Source: Chrysemys picta bellii
Lineage: Eukaryota
Assembly (NCBI RefSeq): GCF_011386835.1
Contig: NC_088794.1
Location: 12,958,001-13,022,000, forward strand
Direction: 5' to 3'
DNA length: 64,000 bases
Shown: piece by piece, positions 31,777 through 38,839 of the stretch
How the letters are laid out: every line of letters begins with the position of its first letter
How positions within the stretch are numbered: position 1 is the first letter of the stretch
Made by a program: the position numbers and the translations under genes
Notes under the pieces: model-generated
Seen by the model: the letters and a program-made list of their open reading frames with translations, nothing else
Databases searched by the model: none
Told to the model about the DNA's origin: nothing

Positions 31777-34307
31777 GTCGGCATGTGGCCTTGTTGGAGC
31801 CGCTCAGCACAGGGGTTGTGTGATGTGTCTTGCTGCTCTCAGGGGCTGGGTTTGCACTGACAGGGGAGAATTGCCTCACCTTTGAGTCCAGATAATTTGC
31901 TGCGTGATTTAAGCCTGCCCAGGCCCCAGCCCCAGCCCCAGAGAGGATGGAAATTCAAGGGCAGGGTGCGCTCTCGCTGCAGCCTGCATGCTGTCCCGGG
32001 GCAGAGGGGTGAGGAGAACTAAGAACTAGGCTGCTGGGATGGGATCTGCTTGTGCCAGCTCCAATGAACGAGAGATTCTACCCACGCGCCATGGGGCGAC
32101 ATCATCACTTTAAAGAAACAAGAGGACAGCGGCTCACTGGCCTTAGTGCCCCTTGGCAGACCCAGCACAATGCACAAAGCCGGGCCACAATGTGGCAGTG
32201 ATCGTACAGGGGAAATCAGCCAAACTGAATCCAGCCAACTCCCCCAATGGAGAGGGGGAGAGACTCCTCTGCTCTGTCTGCGGCCGTGGGGGATTTCTGC
32301 TTGCAGTGATTTCAGAGTATGTCATGTCTGCTGTCCTTCCCCATGAACAGTCCAGGACAATGCGTGTCTGCTGAGCCCTTCCTGCAGATTCCCTTGGAGG
32401 TCATGGCAGCAACTCCTGCAGGGCAGGCGGCCTCCCTCCAAGTGCACAAAGGACATGTTACCAAACTCACCAGGCACCAGCATCCTCCACTCCTGCAGCC
32501 TCCTTCCCATTCGTCTGCATCTGTCTGACTTGTCAGGGCAACAGCTAGTCCGGGCAATATCTTTGTCTACCCAGAAGCCCTGTCATGCCCCATTGTACAG
32601 CTCCTGAGCACAAGTCTTAGCGACAGCCGCTGAGAAATGTTCACCTTAAAGAGAGCCAGATGTTTCTATTGCCTCCCATAGGGCTCAGGCATGGCCCATG
32701 CCCTTATCTCCGACACCCAGTGGGGAGGCAACAGGGGGCAATATCCAGGCCCTGTGGCCCCTGTCACATGATGGAAGGTGGGAGGGTACCCATCTGGCAC
32801 ACGGGAATATGGCAGTGGTTTAACCCAGGGCAGCACAGAGGGTGCATTCAACCAGCCAAAGGAGAACTGTGCTTCCTTTGCCTTTTAAAGTTCTTTACAG
32901 CCCTTCCTCTGAATGATAAAACCTCAGGGGTTCCCCAGCAGGACAGCCCTTTCAGCCCTGCCAGGCTCCAAAATCCACATGAACCTTCCTAAGCGATGTG
33001 TCCAGTCCAAGGCAACCTGAGCGGTGTGACCTGACGTCATCTGTCCCGTTTATTGTTATCCCTTGAATGGTGTCTCTTTCCACTCTAAGACAGTAATGAT
33101 TTTTTCCAGAACTAAATGAGTGAAGGCAGGTTTGTTCCGTGTAACCCCAGAGCCGGTCTCGCTTGCTGGAATGAAAACGCTGTTGTAGACCAGACGTGAA
33201 TTTTGTAGAAGTGCTTTTCAGCAGAGGTGATGCATAGAGGGTTATTATGAGGATTAATTAGTTGATGTTTGTAAAGAACTTGGAAGATGTGACGTGCTGG
33301 CTGAGTGCTACTTTTCATAAGCTACTCAAGAATTGCAGCTGATTTTCCACTTTACTTCTGCTGCCCCTAAGTGTTTGTGCAAAATAAATTCTCCATAAAT
33401 ATTTGGGAGCAACAGAGGCTGCTCTAAACAATAGCAGAGGGTGCGGGACTAGGGACTCCTGTACTCAGTAGCTTGACATAGTTCCTCAGTGTTTTCTTCC
33501 CCCAAATTCCCTGGAAACAATCCCTTCTAACTGATCATTTCAAGACTTGGGGGTGACATGCAGTGAGGGTCTCAGTGCCTCATGCTAAGCCAGTCTCGGA
33601 CAGATTTATGGCTGCCCTTGTAATAGTTGGGATATACCTTATAGATTTCTTTTTGCTTTTCCAGCCATTCCCCCTTCACCCCCCACCCCAGTTAACTGCT
33701 TTACATCCAGCCCCCTTTTAGGATTAGTTCCTGCAGTAAAAATTGCTTTGCTTCTTTTTTTCTGCAGTTTTTTTTCTAGCACTATTTGTTGGAAGTTTTT
33801 CCCCAAGCAGTCCCAGTCTCCCCCTATACATCTCTGGGAAGTTCATAGAGGCCCCCTTTGGATTTAACCCACTGCTCCAGTGCCCTGGAAACTTCTTCCA
33901 ATAAACCCTTTCAGTTCCATTGCTAAACTGCTGGGTTGCGATTCGTGACAGTACAGAGCTACATGGATGATAAATTGTATGTTCCCTGCTCCATACAAAT
34001 GGATCCGATCCCATCATGGAACCACTATGTGGGGGATGGGAGGGCGAGATCTTTTTTACTTTGTTTTTTTAAGAACTTAGTTTGACTTTGGTTTTGTCAC
34101 TCAGATGATTTTATTTGGGAGACAGCGAAGGTATGTGGCGCTGATTACACTCAAGCGTTAGGAGTGGGTATAGCTCATACCACACATCCAAAGTTACACA
34201 GCAAACCTTATTTTATGTACATTTACACATTACATTAACTATACATTGCGTCGCACTTTCTGGAATTGGCTTGGTTACGTTGTAGGAACCAATTTCTGCA
34301 TGGCATG

Positions 34308-34780
34308 TGTTACGGAGTATTGGGGGACTTAGGGCCCTGCACCCCCGGCTTCCTGTGATTCACCATGACTCTCAGCCAGCCAGTAAAGCAGAAGGTTTAT
34401 TTGGATGACAGGAATACAGTCCAAGACAGGTCTTGCAGGCACAGACAACCGGGCCCCCCTCAGTTAGGTCCAGCTTGGGGTCCCAGGGCATGCCGGCCCA
34501 CCCCCCTTGGGGGGTCAGAGCCATCTCTGCCTCCCAGCCAACTCTCCAGCCTCCTTCCAGCCTGCTTCCAGCACTCTGCCTTTAGCGACCCCTCCCACAG
34601 CCTTTGTTCAGTTTTCCGGGCCCCGGAGTCATCTGACCTCCAACCCCCTCCTGGGTTCTCATGTTACAAGCTCAGGTATGTTCCCTTGGGCCGGCACCCA
34701 TCCCCCGATGCAGACCATCCTAGCCACACTCCCCTGTCAGCATTCACACACCCCAGCAAGAACAGTCCCAGTTTGTCACA
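34308..34780 (-). repeat. 3' LTR
   Basis: TGT...ACA termini; differs from the 5' LTR at only 2 positions by manual comparison; AATAAA at 34396-34401. Confidence 0.95.
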
Positions 34781-34793
34781 TCTCTCCCCCCTT
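34781..34793 (-). other. Polypurine tract
   Basis: aaggggggagaga directly abutting the 3' LTR. Confidence 0.9.
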
Positions 34794-35053
34794 CGAGACC
34801 GAACTGAGCGGGGTTACTTTAGCCAGTGACCTGGGGAAGTTCGAACCTACCCCCGTTCCCATGGATGCCCCCGCATTCCTCCAGTTCCTTGGTGAGAATT
34901 ACACCAGGCCCCTTCCGTTTCACGCCCCCCCTTAGGTCGGGGGTGCTTGATGGCACTCGCAGTTCGCATGTGGGAAGGTTTATGCGGCCTGTGCCCTTTT
35001 CCCACCCCCATACCTCTGGGGCTCCAACTGGGCTGTGGTCTTTTTCCAGCACT

Positions 35054-37591
35054 TCAGTTTGGAGGTCTGTGCTTTGGGCCCTCTTGGTTCAGAGCCGCCC
35101 TTTTAACCTTGGCCACCCTCTGGAAAGGATCCTTTATGCTGGGCAAGGGTCCTAAAGCTGTTTTCCCCTTGTCCCAGGCCTTCCTCCCCCTCTGACAGGG
35201 GTCACAGGATCCGCAGTACTGTCGGACAGTAACAAAGACCCCAGGCCAGTAAAAGCTCCGTAGCAGCCTCTGCTGGGTACGCCAGGTTCCCTGGTGCCCT
35301 GAGAGGGGAATGTCATGGGCCCGGCACAGCAGCTGGCGGCGATACTTCTGGGGTACCACCAGCTGCCTCCTGATCCCCCCTGACTCCATTTTCCCTGGGG
35401 GAGCCCATTTTCGGTACAGGAACCCCTTCTTCCACAGGAACCTTTTCCGGCCACCTTGTTTCATGGTCTGTACCGCATTGAGGTCGGCCAGGTCCCTTAT
35501 CTTCCGCAAGGAGGGGTTTCTCTGTAACTCGGCCTGGAACTCAGCAGCTGGGACAGGGATGGCCACCTGCTCTTTCTCGCCCGCTGGGTTCGAAGCTGCA
35601 GCCTCCCTGAGCCGCGTCCCTGGGCGTTCCCTCCCCACCAGGTTAGGGTCCTGCGCCTCAGGCAAGGCACCCCCCCCAAGGCCAGGGCGCAGGGCCCCTC
35701 GCCGGCTCTGACTGCGGGTCACAACCAGTGCCTTTTGGGGGTTGCTTGGCCAGTTCTCCAGGTCCCCCCCCATCAATACCTCAGTGGGCAAATACGGGTG
35801 TACCCCCACATCCTTGGGGCCCTCCTTGGCCCCCCACTTCAGGTGTACCCTTGCCACGGGCACTTTGACTGGTGTTCCGCCCACCCCCGTCAGGGTCAGG
35901 TAGGAGTTGGGCACCACCTGATCTGGGGCCACCACCTCGGGCCGGGCCAGCGTCACCTCTGCGCCCGTATTCCAGTATCCATTGACCTTCCTCCCATCCA
36001 CCTCCAGGGGAACAAGGTACTCTCTCCGGAGGGACAGCCCCGCGCCCACCGTATAAACCAAAAACCCTGAGTCTGGGGCATCCAGCCCCCTAGAGGAGCT
36101 GGCCTGGGGCCCTTCTCTCTCTTGAGCAGTTGATAAGCTGCCAGCCCCTCTTGCGTGAGAAGCCTGCCCCTTGTCCGTCTGGGCCTCTACCAAGTTAACC
36201 CTATGCAGGTTCGGTCTGCTCAGTCTGTCCTTGAGCTTGGGGCACTGGGCCCGAACGTGGCCTCTTCGGCCGCAGTAATAGCAGCTCATGTTCTGTGGGT
36301 CCCCTCGAGCCGGTTGGTTGTCCCTGATGCTGGGCATTTCCCGGGGGAGGGGATTCCCAATATTCCCCCTTTGGGAGGTCCCAGGGTGACTCTTTTTCTG
36401 CATCGCGGCGGGCCTGTTCCTTTGGGGCTCCTCCCTGCCACCCCCTGACCGGCTCTTTACAAACTCATCAGCCAGCTGCCCGGCGTGTCGCGGGTTCTCT
36501 GGCTTTCTGTCCACCAACCACAGCCTCAGGTCGGATGGGCACCGCTCATACAGTTGCTCCAGTACCAGCAGTTTAATCAGGTCCTCCTTCGTCTGGGCCC
36601 CACCAGCCCACTTGCTGGCGTATCTTCCCATGCGGACGGCTAGTTGCAGATATGAGATCTTAGGGGCTTTATTTTGACTTCGGAACCTTTCCCGGTACAT
36701 CTCAGGAGTCAGCCCAAACTCACGTAGCAGGGCCTTTTTGAATAGTTCGTAGTCCCCTTTCTCTGCCTCTTCCAGTTGGCGGTACAATGCCACGGATTTG
36801 GGGTCCAGTAAGGGGGTAAGGACCCGGAGTTTGTCCGCGGGATCAACCCGGTGCAGCTCGCAGGCCGTCTTAAAGGCCTTCAGGAAGTCGTCCATGTCCT
36901 CCCCCTCCTTGTATGGGGCCATGATGCACTTATCAAAGCTCCGTGCAGTCCTGGGTCCCCCCTCACTCACCGCAGCCGGGGGTTTGCTGCCCTTTAATTT
37001 CGCCAGTTCCAGGTTATGCTGTCTTTGTCTCTCATTCTCCTCCCGTTCACGCTGATGCTGTCTCTCTTTCTTCTTCCGTTTACGCTGATGCTGTTTCTCT
37101 TTCTCCTCCCGTTCACGCTGATGCTGTCTCTCTTTCTCCTCCCGTTCATGCTGTCTCTGTCGTTTACGATCCTCCAGCTCTCTCAGTTTTAGCTCTTTCT
37201 TCCATTCCAGCCAATTTCGCTCCACGGATGCCGAACGTCGCCGGGAGGATCCTCTGCTGGCCGGCGGGCTTCGCCGGGGGGATCCCCTGCTGGCCGGGGG
37301 GGCCACGGCGCCTTTGGTATTTGCTGGGCTCCTCCCCACCCTTCCCCTAGGCATAGGAAGGAGGGGTCTCGGGAAGCCCTTAGCAGCCGGCTGACCACTC
37401 CCAGCTGGGACAAACACTGGTGCCTGCGCTGCGTATGCCAGGCTGCTTTCCTGAGACACAGGGATCAGTTTATTCGCGCGATCTTCCGCCTCCAGCTGGG
37501 CAATGAGCTGTTCTTTGGTGAGCTTCCCAATGCGCAGCTGCCTCTGCTTGCACAGCTCCACCAGGTCGCTCTTAAGCCGCTTGGCATACAT
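35054..37591 (-). CDS. Gag-protease-integrase(N-terminal) polyprotein, 845 aa from ATG 37591; protease inactive, no RT/RNase H
   Basis: Coiled-coil QHQREREEKER repeats; SCAN-like LLVLEQLYERCP..LRLWLVDRKP; CCHC knuckle CYYCGRRGHVRAQC; protease W[N]TGAEV; integrase Zn domain AHDIPLSGHQG...CGSCDPC. Confidence 0.85.
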   Translation of the reverse strand: MYAKRLKSDLVELCKQRQLRIGKLTKEQLIAQLEAEDRANKLIPVSQESSLAYAAQAPVFVPAGSGQPAAKGFPRPLLPMPRGRVGRSPANTKGAVAPPASRGSPRRSPPASRGSSRRRSASVERNWLEWKKELKLRELEDRKRQRQHEREEKERQHQREREEKEKQHQRKRKKKERQHQREREENERQRQHNLELAKLKGSKPPAAVSEGGPRTARSFDKCIMAPYKEGEDMDDFLKAFKTACELHRVDPADKLRVLTPLLDPKSVALYRQLEEAEKGDYELFKKALLREFGLTPEMYRERFRSQNKAPKISYLQLAVRMGRYASKWAGGAQTKEDLIKLLVLEQLYERCPSDLRLWLVDRKPENPRHAGQLADEFVKSRSGGGREEPQRNRPAAMQKKSHPGTSQRGNIGNPLPREMPSIRDNQPARGDPQNMSCYYCGRRGHVRAQCPKLKDRLSRPNLHRVNLVEAQTDKGQASHARGAGSLSTAQEREGPQASSSRGLDAPDSGFLVYTVGAGLSLRREYLVPLEVDGRKVNGYWNTGAEVTLARPEVVAPDQVVPNSYLTLTGVGGTPVKVPVARVHLKWGAKEGPKDVGVHPYLPTEVLMGGDLENWPSNPQKALVVTRSQSRRGALRPGLGGGALPEAQDPNLVGRERPGTRLREAAASNPAGEKEQVAIPVPAAEFQAELQRNPSLRKIRDLADLNAVQTMKQGGRKRFLWKKGFLYRKWAPPGKMESGGIRRQLVVPQKYRRQLLCRAHDIPLSGHQGTWRTQQRLLRSFYWPGVFVTVRQYCGSCDPCQRGRKAWDKGKTALGPLPSIKDPFQRVAKVKRAALNQEGPKHRPPN

Positions 37592-37911
37592 CTTCCCGCT
37601 GGCCACTCACCGGCCTGTGTGCTCACAGCTCCCCACAGTTCCCAGGGGGCCCCCTAGTGTGCCAGCCCTTCTCGAGGTCACCACCTCTCTGCCAGGGTCG
37701 AGCTGCAGACTCCTCCGCCCCTGGGACCACTCGCTGCGATCCCCCCGGGGGACCCTGTTACTGCAAAAGTCCTTCTTGCTGGTCACACACTCCCAGGGGT
37801 AATAACCGTCTCTCTCCCACTCTTCAGCAGGCCTGGTCCCCGTTAATCCCCCTTCGTTTTACTGCTTCCCAGTTACTTACTGCAGGAAGCGCCGTCCACG
37901 GGGTGCAGTAG

Positions 37912-37929
37912 ATCCCACCGCTGCCACCA
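37912..37929 (-). other. Primer-binding site, tRNA-Leu
   Basis: TGGTGGCAGCGGTGGGAT, complementary to the 3' 18 nt of vertebrate tRNA-Leu(AAG/TAG), 2 nt from the 5' LTR. Confidence 0.9.
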
Positions 37930-37931
37930 GT

Positions 37932-38404
37932 TGTCACGGAGTATTGGGGGACTTAGGGCCCTGCACCCCCGGCTTCCTGTGATTCACCATGACTCTCAGC
38001 CAGCCAGTAAAGCAGAAGGTTTATTTGGATGACAGGAATACAGTCCAAGACAGGTCTTGCAGGCACAGACAACCGGGCCCCCCTCAGTTAGGTCCAGCTT
38101 GGGGTCCCAGGGCATGCCGGCCCACCCCCCTTGGGGGGTCAGAGCCATCTCTGCCTCCCAGCCAACTCTCCAGCCTCCTTCCAGCCTGCTTCCAGCACTC
38201 TGCCTTTAGCGACCCCTCCCACAGCCTTTGTTCAGTTTTCCGGGCCCCGGAGTCATCTGACCTCCAACCCCCTCCTGGGTTCTCATGTTACAAGCTCAGG
38301 TATGTTCCCTTGGGCCGGCACCCATCCCCCAATGCAGACCATCCTAGCCACACTCCCCTGTCAGCATTCACACACCCCAGCAAGAACAGTCCCAGTTTGT
38401 CACA
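37932..38404 (-). repeat. 5' LTR
   Basis: 473-bp direct repeat of 34308-34780. Confidence 0.95.
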
Positions 38405-38839
38405 GCATGCTCTATGTACGCACTGTTTATGCACAACTTGCTTTTTACCTTATTTTATGTTTTAGGGTTGTTTTATGCATTGTTAACTTGTCCATTGTAA
38501 GTTGTTCCCTGAGTGTTCCCTCTTCTCTTAGCTAGTACAGACGTTCTGTTCCCAGCCTGCTGATCCATTCACCTCTTTAATCCAAAAAATAAGGCTTCAC
38601 CCATGTCCAGTTACTCTTGTCGAGCCAAGCCTACATTAGCCATTATTACTGACCCCTTTCTCAAAAGATACTAGGAGTGGAGCTCACACAGAGCACAAGT
38701 AACATATGAAATTGGCTCAGGTCATCTACCAGCGTTTGGTGTGGGGTGGGAATGCAGACATGGAATTCAGCTGTGCAGAGAACCACGCAGCATCAGTATG
38801 AGTTACAGTATTTAGGGCTATGGACCCCTCTGCGTCAGA

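What the first reader, a model, noticed from the sequence alone, without database searches (positions are those of the whole stretch)
34847..37591. APOBEC-type G-to-A hypermutation of a young LTR retrotransposon in a non-mammal
Seen: adjacent 33-bp Gag repeat units 37064-37096 and 37097-37129 differ at 4 sites (37072, 37075, 37081, 37095). All are TC>TT on the + strand, which is the first-strand cDNA (GA>AA in sense). The protease DTG motif is NTG through the same change (35971). One LTR mismatch (34311) is also TC>TT. Many residues look like E>K, D>N or R>Q/K changes (e.g. FLWKKGFLYRKW, LQRNPSL, DLENW); this relies on my recollection of related elements. Most TGG codons survive, as a strict GA context predicts. 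Near-identical LTRs exclude age as the cause. Known: cDNA C-to-U editing by APOBECs gives this signature, APOBEC3 is a placental-mammal family, and edited LTR elements have been reported in non-mammalian vertebrates (Knisbacher & Levanon 2016). Inference: a TC-preferring turtle deaminase (APOBEC1-like or another AID/APOBEC) restricts this family in the germline.
Basis: partly seen in the sequence, partly recalled or inferred. Interest (0 to 1): 0.86.

Follow-up and report, generated by a model that had tools for sequence, protein, structure and literature searches.

The report
Deaminase-edited young retrotransposon copy in a turtle
One very recent copy of an abundant turtle retrotransposon carries about 50 strand-specific G-to-A changes, almost all at GA, that no other copy has. 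This is the mark of an APOBEC-type DNA-editing defence, which the literature I could search has not reported for turtles.

Summary
The element (34308-38404, minus strand) has 473-bp LTRs with 2 mismatches and a 5-bp target duplication. It is a non-autonomous Gmr1-like Ty3/gypsy derivative with one 845-codon Gag(SCAN)-CCHC-protease-integrase zinc finger ORF.

I compared it copy by copy, without a consensus, with five Chrysemys picta bellii copies. Those are 98.1-98.95% alike among themselves.
- The window copy has 72 private changes, of which 52 are G>A and 3 are C>T in sense.
- 50 of 358 GpA sites changed, against 2 of 1038 other G sites (Fisher 1.5e-28). The other copies have 9-23 unbiased private changes.
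- In contigs of four sequencing runs, 44-46 places read C where the window has T on the + strand. That C holds over 99% of the depth at almost every listed place, so the A alleles are not the family state.
- Four edits are present in both LTRs and one only in the 3' LTR. This fits editing of minus-strand cDNA in this copy's own reverse transcription.
- A contig from another individual shows the exact empty site, so the insertion is polymorphic.
- Two other family proteins look independently edited.

The enzyme was not identified.

The parts
34303..34307 (.). Target-site duplication GCATG, left copy
   Evidence: The same 5 bases follow the other LTR at 38405-38409. X37 contig record 25 joins 34302 directly to 38405, which is the exact empty site.
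34308..34780 (-). 3' LTR of the element in sense orientation, 473 bp, TG...CA ends
   Evidence: 471 of 473 positions are identical to the other LTR. It carries five private G>A sites. Four are also in the 5' LTR and one (34311) is not.
34781..34794 (-). Polypurine tract directly upstream of the 3' LTR
   Evidence: Read directly from the sequence.
35054..37591 (-). Single ORF of 845 codons plus stop: SCAN-like Gag, CCHC knuckle, protease (motif reads NTG), integrase zinc finger. No integrase core, RT or RNase H.
   Evidence: Pfam SCAN 1.6e-10, Integrase_H2C2 1.1e-17, zf-CCHC 2.7e-4. Relatives' ORFs are 888-924 aa. The stop overlaps a private site.
35183..35356 (-). Integrase_H2C2 zinc-binding domain (aa 746-803)
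35963..35971 (-). Protease active-site triplet, reads N-T-G here and D-T-G in relatives
   Evidence: In one search, 35971 is read as C at over 99% of contig depth.
36236..36286 (-). CCHC zinc knuckle (aa 436-452)
36449..36706 (-). SCAN-like capsid domain (aa 296-381)
37014..37178 (-). Tandem 33-bp repeats in gag (family D2). Copy number varies between family copies. One unit carries four private G>A sites (37072, 37075, 37081, 37095).
37911..37929 (-). Primer-binding-site-like stretch starting TGG, two bases after the 5' LTR
   Evidence: Read from the sequence. Its match to the 3' end of a tRNA-Leu rests on my memory only, because the window has no tRNA gene.
37932..38404 (-). 5' LTR in sense orientation, 473 bp
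38405..38409 (.). Target-site duplication GCATG, right copy
34311..38398 (-). 52 window-private G>A sites in sense (T on the + strand), 51 followed by A. 36 lie in the ORF: 32 amino-acid changes, 3 silent, 1 at the stop.
   Evidence: Coordinates are listed.

Best explanation
This is a very recent germline insertion of a non-autonomous Gmr1-like (Ty3/gypsy) LTR retrotransposon, most likely in the painted turtle. Its minus-strand cDNA was deaminated at about 48 cytosines in a 5'-TC context during the reverse transcription that made this copy. The uracils were copied as A on the plus strand and the edited DNA integrated. This leaves about 50 GA>AA changes (14% of all GpA sites). They include a changed protease active-site residue and an early stop.

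Shown:
- the strand bias and the dinucleotide specificity;
- that the changes are private to this copy;
- that they are confined to the element and were made before integration;
- that the insertion is young and polymorphic.

Inferred:
- The agent is an AID/APOBEC-family single-strand DNA cytidine deaminase. The strict TC context fits an APOBEC1-type enzyme or another TC-preferring paralogue, and does not fit AID.
- It acts as a defence in the germline or early embryo.
For: - Private-change spectrum against five close copies: 72 changes, 52 G>A and 3 C>T. The other copies have 9-23 changes with no bias.
- Context: 50 of 358 GpA against 2 of 1038 other G, p = 1.5e-28. With a sixth copy as outgroup, 51 of 52 are GpA.
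- Without its G>A sites the copy is 98.2-98.8% identical to the others. That is the range the others show among themselves, 98.1-98.95%.
- Pairwise alignments hold runs of 5-8 consecutive G>A mismatches.
- Contigs of four runs from three samples give T>C at 44-46 places, against A>G 4-6, C>T 10 and G>A 9-12. At almost all listed T>C places C holds over 99% of depth, and the remainder is near single-copy depth.
- Protein level: 24 of 28 private substitutions are of G>A type.
- Four edits are shared by both LTRs and one lies only in the 3' LTR U5 end (34311). No such changes occur in the flanks.
- The LTRs are 471/473 identical, and an exact empty-site contig exists in another individual (X37 record 25).
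- Recurrence: P0086 has 10 of 12 private residues explained by one G>A at GpA in relatives' codons. In the P0014 lineage 10 of 13 changes are E>K, D>N or R>K.
- Turtles have several APOBEC1 paralogues (PMC5889660), and reptiles have APOBEC5 (bioRxiv 10.1101/2025.05.21.655229).
Against: - No deaminase was examined, so the agent is inferred from the footprint alone.
- Only one copy is documented at the DNA level. The two further cases rest on protein sequences, with codons inferred from relatives.
- The expected gradient towards the PPT is weak (p = 0.03 with post hoc bins; rank test p = 0.81).
- The runs were available only as contigs, which drop rare variants. The evidence that the window's own alleles exist in reads is therefore indirect (residual depth).
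- The family remains very active, so any restriction is leaky.
Confidence: 0.85

Rival explanations
1. The editing happened one or more retrotransposition cycles earlier. This copy would then have inherited the A alleles from an edited progenitor, and a small edited subfamily would exist.
For: A non-autonomous element needs only its cis sequences to be copied again, so an edited copy could still propagate. Residual depth at some private sites is one to five times single-copy depth.
Against: - At almost all listed T>C places C holds over 99% of contig depth in all four runs.
- None of 8 DNA copies or 26 proteins shares the alleles.
- The share of the element's 31-mers held by the best run (0.62) equals the share already explained by six unedited copies (0.618).
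- A GpA edit present only in the U5 end of the 3' LTR (34311) would be lost in a further cycle.
Confidence: 0.1
2. Reverse transcriptase misincorporated bases under a skewed dNTP pool (low dCTP). This would give G>A changes without any deaminase.
For: This was the historical explanation of GpA-biased retroviral hypermutation (my own knowledge). Sequence alone cannot tell a U:G intermediate from a T:G misincorporation.
Against: - The specificity is near absolute (51 of 52 at GpA, 14% of GpA sites hit against 0.2% of other G). This is typical of TC-specific APOBEC enzymes.
- Sister copies made by the same family's machinery show no bias.
- The same signature recurs in only a minority of copies.
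Confidence: 0.04
3. The locus was deaminated after integration, for example on single-stranded DNA exposed by transcription, as in clustered mutation showers.
For: Strand-coordinated TC clusters also arise in genomic DNA (my own knowledge).
Against: - Four identical edits sit at homologous positions in both LTRs.
- The changes stop at the element's ends. The few flank differences between individuals are not T>C.
Confidence: 0.01
4. The changes are an assembly or sequencing artefact in this repeat copy.
For: The window's alleles are nearly absent from Logan contigs even in the likely source sample.
Against: - Contigs drop rare variants by construction.
- The residual depth at many private sites in X25 (12-40) is near the flank depth of about 20.
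- No known error mode gives strand-specific GpA>ApA changes confined to one element and repeated in both LTRs.
- Collapsing a repeat would import family alleles, not create new ones.
Confidence: 0.02

Closest known systems
APOBEC3F/A3A/A3B-type GA>AA hypermutation of retroviruses and endogenous retroviruses in placental mammals
   Same: - Sense-strand G>A excess with a 3' A, that is TC on the minus-strand cDNA.
- Clustered changes private to single integrated copies.
- Coding capacity is damaged.
- There is a weak extra preference for GAA (18/80 against 32/278), reminiscent of TTC.
   Different: APOBEC3 genes exist only in placental mammals (PMC4866542, PMC5889660), so a different paralogue must act here. 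The target is a Ty3/gypsy-class element, not an ERV.
DNA-edited LTR elements in birds and marsupials (Knisbacher and Levanon, PMC4866542; opossum ERVs, bioRxiv 10.1101/2025.05.21.655229)
   Same: The footprint appears in a genome without APOBEC3. It is detected by comparing an edited copy with its unedited relatives.
   Different: - The reported motifs are GG in songbirds and GY in opossum gammaretroviruses. Here it is GA.
- That screen found edited elements in 3 of 15 non-mammalian vertebrates, all birds.
- It covered ERVs. The word Gypsy does not occur in the main text.
Lizard APOBEC1 and G>A-edited L1 elements in Anolis (Lindic et al., PMC3880073)
   Same: A non-avian reptile with a DNA-mutator APOBEC1 and genomic G>A editing of retroelements.
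   Different: In Anolis the signal was in L1 only, not in L2, CR1 or LTR elements. Here an LTR element in a turtle is edited.
Gmr1-like Ty3/gypsy retrotransposons (integrase placed before RT) with SCAN-like Gag
   Same: Autonomous sea-turtle relatives have the order SCAN-Gag, CCHC, protease, integrase (H2C2, rve, SH3), RT, RNase H. The window copy shares Gag, protease and the integrase zinc finger at 61-68% protein identity with full-length relatives.
   Different: The window family stops after the integrase zinc finger and lacks the integrase core, RT and RNase H. It must therefore be mobilised in trans.

Membership tests
APOBEC-type minus-strand cDNA hypermutation footprint | Excess of G>A over C>T on the element's sense strand | tested here: met
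   52 of 1396 G sites against 3 of 985 C sites, p = 1.9e-9. In contigs, T>C at 44-46 places against A>G at 4-6.
APOBEC-type minus-strand cDNA hypermutation footprint | Dinucleotide context specificity | tested here: met
   50 of 358 GpA against 2 of 1038 other G, p = 1.5e-28. 51 of 52 with the stricter set.
APOBEC-type minus-strand cDNA hypermutation footprint | Changes are private to the copy, and close unedited relatives exist | tested here: met
   Without the G>A sites the copy is 98.2-98.8% identical to five copies.
APOBEC-type minus-strand cDNA hypermutation footprint | Clusters of consecutive G>A mismatches in pairwise alignments (five or more, as used in the avian APOBEC1 preprint that adapted Knisbacher and Levanon's method) | tested here: met
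   Longest runs are 5-8 against each of five copies.
APOBEC-type minus-strand cDNA hypermutation footprint | Made before integration: confined to the element, same edits in both LTRs | tested here: met
   Four shared LTR edits and one 3'-LTR-only edit. The flanks are free of the signature.
APOBEC-type minus-strand cDNA hypermutation footprint | Editing density rises towards the polypurine tract | tested here: inconclusive
   7 of 23 in the last 324 nt against 43 of 335 elsewhere, p = 0.03 with post hoc bins. Rank test p = 0.81.
APOBEC-type minus-strand cDNA hypermutation footprint | A host AID/APOBEC deaminase with the matching TC preference | not testable with these tools
   Literature only. 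Turtles have several APOBEC1 paralogues (PMC5889660), and reptiles have APOBEC5 (2025 preprint). The TC preference of APOBEC1 is from my own knowledge.
APOBEC3-mediated editing | Host carries APOBEC3 genes | not tested
   By the literature APOBEC3 is confined to placental mammals (PMC4866542, PMC5889660). I do not file the finding here.
Gmr1-like Ty3/gypsy LTR retrotransposon | LTRs with TG...CA ends, target-site duplication, PBS and PPT | tested here: met
.
Gmr1-like Ty3/gypsy LTR retrotransposon | Pol order with integrase before RT | tested here: met
   Met in the autonomous relatives P0008 and P0013. In the window copy the integrase zinc finger follows the protease.
Gmr1-like Ty3/gypsy LTR retrotransposon | Own RT, RNase H and integrase core (autonomy) | tested here: not met
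   Pfam finds none in the window ORF or in P0001. It is a non-autonomous derivative.

The most novel reading that the evidence does not exclude
Painted turtles have a currently active cDNA-deaminase defence that is almost strictly TC-specific. It is probably one of the expanded turtle APOBEC1 paralogues or APOBEC5. It repeatedly edits a highly active Gmr1-like retrotransposon family in the germline. This would be the first DNA-editing footprint on an LTR element in a non-avian reptile and on a Ty3/gypsy-class element in a vertebrate. Its GA motif differs from the GG of birds and the GY of marsupials.
Probability: 0.5. Interest if true: 0.78.

Novelty: new member of a known kind. Interest (0 to 1): 0.7.

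Why it matters
APOBEC3 explains retroelement editing in placental mammals. Which enzymes do this job elsewhere is still open, and reptiles are the least documented group. In Anolis only L1 editing was seen, and the large LTR screen of 2016 found non-mammalian cases only in birds.

This case offers:
- a statistically clean footprint with a sharp GA motif;
- a family that is still jumping, shown by 100% identical LTRs in sister copies and by a polymorphic insertion;
- a host lineage already known to have several APOBEC1 paralogues.

That makes the enzyme question directly testable. The motif predicts which turtle paralogue should prefer TC. It also shows that non-ERV LTR elements are targets.

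Tried and rejected
- A search for further copies in the window found none.
- Earlier notes of this scan near the place held nothing. A word search including APOBEC held nothing.
No DNA is on record for P0014, and I did not try P0086 for the same reason.
- The second copy in L004 and the more distant copy L002 were tested for the same bias. They show none and serve as controls.
- The gradient towards the PPT was inconclusive. Preferences at positions -1, +2 and -2 were only weak trends (p = 0.11, 0.07, 0.89).
- The window has no tRNA gene, so the tRNA-Leu assignment of the PBS stays a recollection.
- The supplement of PMC4866542 is not held. I cannot say whether the painted turtle was among its ten other non-mammalian vertebrates.
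- I first placed the LTR ends 2 nt too far right, which made the X37 contig look 2 nt off. With the correct ends (34780 and 38404) it is an exact empty site.
- Two joints (34293 to 38495 and 34293 to 38506) have short sides. The adjoining flank bins are about 30 times deeper than single copy. I read these joints as paralogues of a host repeat, not as alleles.
- A looser protein screen under-counted the window's private changes because of its filters, so I do not use it as evidence.
Full report
**Anatomy**

The finding lies in a complete LTR element on the minus strand, 34308-38404.
- It has 473-bp LTRs (34308-34780 and 37932-38404) that differ at two positions.
- It is flanked by a 5-bp target duplication, GCATG.
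- A polypurine tract abuts the 3' LTR.
- A TGG-initiated primer-binding-like stretch lies two bases after the 5' LTR.
- One ORF runs from 37591 to a stop at 35054-35056, 845 codons.
- Pfam finds a SCAN-like capsid domain, a CCHC knuckle and the integrase H2C2 zinc finger. The protease triplet reads NTG.
- There is no integrase core, RT or RNase H.

Full-length relatives in sea turtles have the order Gag(SCAN), CCHC, protease, integrase, RT, RNase H. This is the Gmr1-like order. The window family is therefore a derivative that ends after the integrase zinc finger and must be copied in trans. Two earlier first-stage notes on other pieces of this genome describe the same family in the same terms.

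**Relatives**

The protein search found the same RT-less architecture in many Chrysemys picta bellii proteins, and in Malaclemys and Terrapene. I fetched the DNA of six copies. Five are full-length and 98.1-98.95% identical to one another, but only 96.4-97.3% identical to the window copy. Their own LTR pairs are 99.8-100% identical apart from one gap. The family is therefore active now or was very recently.

I counted sites where one copy differs from all the others and the others agree.
- The window copy has 72 such private changes. 52 are G>A in sense, 3 are C>T and 4 are A>G.
- The five other copies have 9-23 private changes with no bias.
- Of the G sites on which the other copies agree, 50 of 358 followed by A changed, against 2 of 1038 followed by C, G or T (Fisher p = 1.5e-28).
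- G>A against C>T gives p = 1.9e-9.
- With the more distant copy L002 also required to agree, there are again 52 G>A, 51 of them at GpA.
- Set the G>A sites aside and the window copy is 98.2-98.8% identical to the others, exactly their own range. It is an ordinary member plus about 50 edits.
- Pairwise alignments hold runs of 5-8 consecutive G>A mismatches.
- The 5' neighbour of the edited G is not mainly C, so CpG decay is not the cause.
- L002 and a second copy in L004 show no bias.

All six named sites are private G>A at GpA: the four repeat-unit sites, the protease site 35971 and the LTR mismatch 34311.
- In the ORF, 36 edits give 32 amino-acid changes, 3 silent changes and one that overlaps the stop. 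The relatives' ORFs run 43-79 codons further.
- Against 26 family proteins, 24 of the window's 28 private substitutions are E>K, D>N, R>K, R>Q or G>E.

**Independent check with sequencing runs**

The unique flank is held at 0.99 by a run of organism A that may be the source sample. I laid contigs of four runs, from three samples and three studies, on 33900-38800.
- The family's depth is thousands of times that of the flank.
- There are 44-46 places where the contigs read C and the window has T on the + strand. This compares with 4-6 for the mirror change A>G, 10 for C>T and 9-12 for G>A.
- At almost all listed T>C places C holds over 99% of the depth. What remains is often close to single-copy depth.
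- The share of the element's 31-mers held by the best run (0.62) equals the share explained by the six unedited copies (0.618).

The A alleles are therefore rare or unique in the genome, not the family state.

**Timing**

- Four edits are present at homologous places in both LTRs, and none of the signature is in the flanks. The changes therefore arose before integration.
- One GpA edit (34311) is only in the U5 end of the 3' LTR.
- By the standard model of reverse transcription (established knowledge), the minus strand of the 3' LTR is copied twice. The first copy is plus-strand strong-stop DNA, which ends up in the 5' LTR. The second copy is made when the plus strand is completed.
- A deamination between the two copying steps marks only the 3' LTR, and it would be erased by a further cycle. 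This is inference from a single site. It points to editing in the reverse transcription that made this very copy.
- The other LTR mismatch is a CpG transition in the 5' LTR, an ordinary change after insertion.

**Age**

Contig record 25 of run X37 comes from another individual of organism A and has single-copy depth. It joins 34302 directly to 38405. That is the flank, one GCATG and the other flank, which is the exact empty site. A contig of X19 starts at the same place. In the likely source run a contig runs from the flank 29 nt into the LTR. The insertion is thus polymorphic, in line with its near-identical LTRs.

**Recurrence**

Two other C. picta bellii family proteins look independently edited.
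- P0086 differs from all six DNA-backed relatives at 12 residues. Ten are explained by one G>A at GpA in the relatives' codons. The sites differ from the window's, and its DTG is intact.
- In a three-way comparison the P0014 lineage has 13 changes, of which E>K 5, D>N 4 and R>K 1.
- No DNA is on record for P0014, so both cases are hints rather than proof.

**Mechanism and agent**

Sense-strand G>A at GpA means C>U at TC on minus-strand DNA. This is the footprint of TC-preferring AID/APOBEC enzymes: A3A, A3B, A3C and A3F in PMC5391955 Table 1, and APOBEC1 from my own knowledge.
- AID prefers WRC, which would give GY in sense, and does not fit.
- APOBEC3 is confined to placental mammals (PMC4866542).
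- Turtles have several APOBEC1 paralogues or splice forms, Malaclemys among them (PMC5889660). Reptiles also have APOBEC5 (bioRxiv 10.1101/2025.05.21.655229).
- I could not test any enzyme.
- The old alternative of RT misincorporation under low dCTP cannot be excluded by sequence. It fits poorly with a 51 of 52 context specificity and with unbiased sister copies.

**Novelty**

- Knisbacher and Levanon found edited elements in 32 of 46 mammals and 3 of 15 non-mammalian vertebrates, all three of them birds. Adding the avian project genomes brought the birds to 37. Turtles are not mentioned.
- Lindic et al. found G>A editing in lizard L1 but not in lizard LTR elements.
- Searches for turtle or Testudines together with APOBEC and hypermutation returned nothing relevant.

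The kind of event is well known. The host clade, the element class and the GA motif outside placentals appear to be new within the library I could search.

**Limits**

- There is one DNA-level case.
- The runs were available only as contigs.
- The species is inferred from the relatives and from coded run labels.
- The gradient towards the PPT is weak.

Noticed in passing
window 34302/38405 junction; run X37 record 25 and run X19 record 15: Contigs from other individuals join the two flanks with a single GCATG. This is the exact empty site, so the insertion is polymorphic in the species.
   Followed up: partly
L001, L003, L004, L005, L006 (Chrysemys picta bellii, GCA_011386835.2): Five sister copies have 99.8-100% identical LTR pairs and intact 888-924 aa ORFs. 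The element's contig depth is thousands of times the flank depth. This is a very abundant non-autonomous family that is active now or was very recently.
   Followed up: partly
P0086 and P0014 (family proteins of C. picta bellii; no DNA held): Both show private E>K, D>N, R>K and G>E changes at sites other than the window's. This suggests two more independently GA>AA-edited copies.
   Followed up: partly
window 37014-37178 and the matching region of L001-L006: The number of 33-bp repeat units in gag (the EREEKERQHQR-type units) varies between copies.
   Followed up: no
window 34064-34227 and 38492-38655: The DNA next to the insertion is about 30 times deeper than single copy in all four runs. 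The element seems to sit inside another, moderately repeated sequence. Two short-sided joints (34293 to 38495 and 34293 to 38506) probably come from paralogues of that repeat.
   Followed up: no
P0005, P0016, P0026, P0030: Several annotated painted-turtle gene models (named CDK12-like, Ig-domain, GBP1-like) contain this family's Gag/SCAN part. They are probably chimeric gene predictions across insertions.
   Followed up: no
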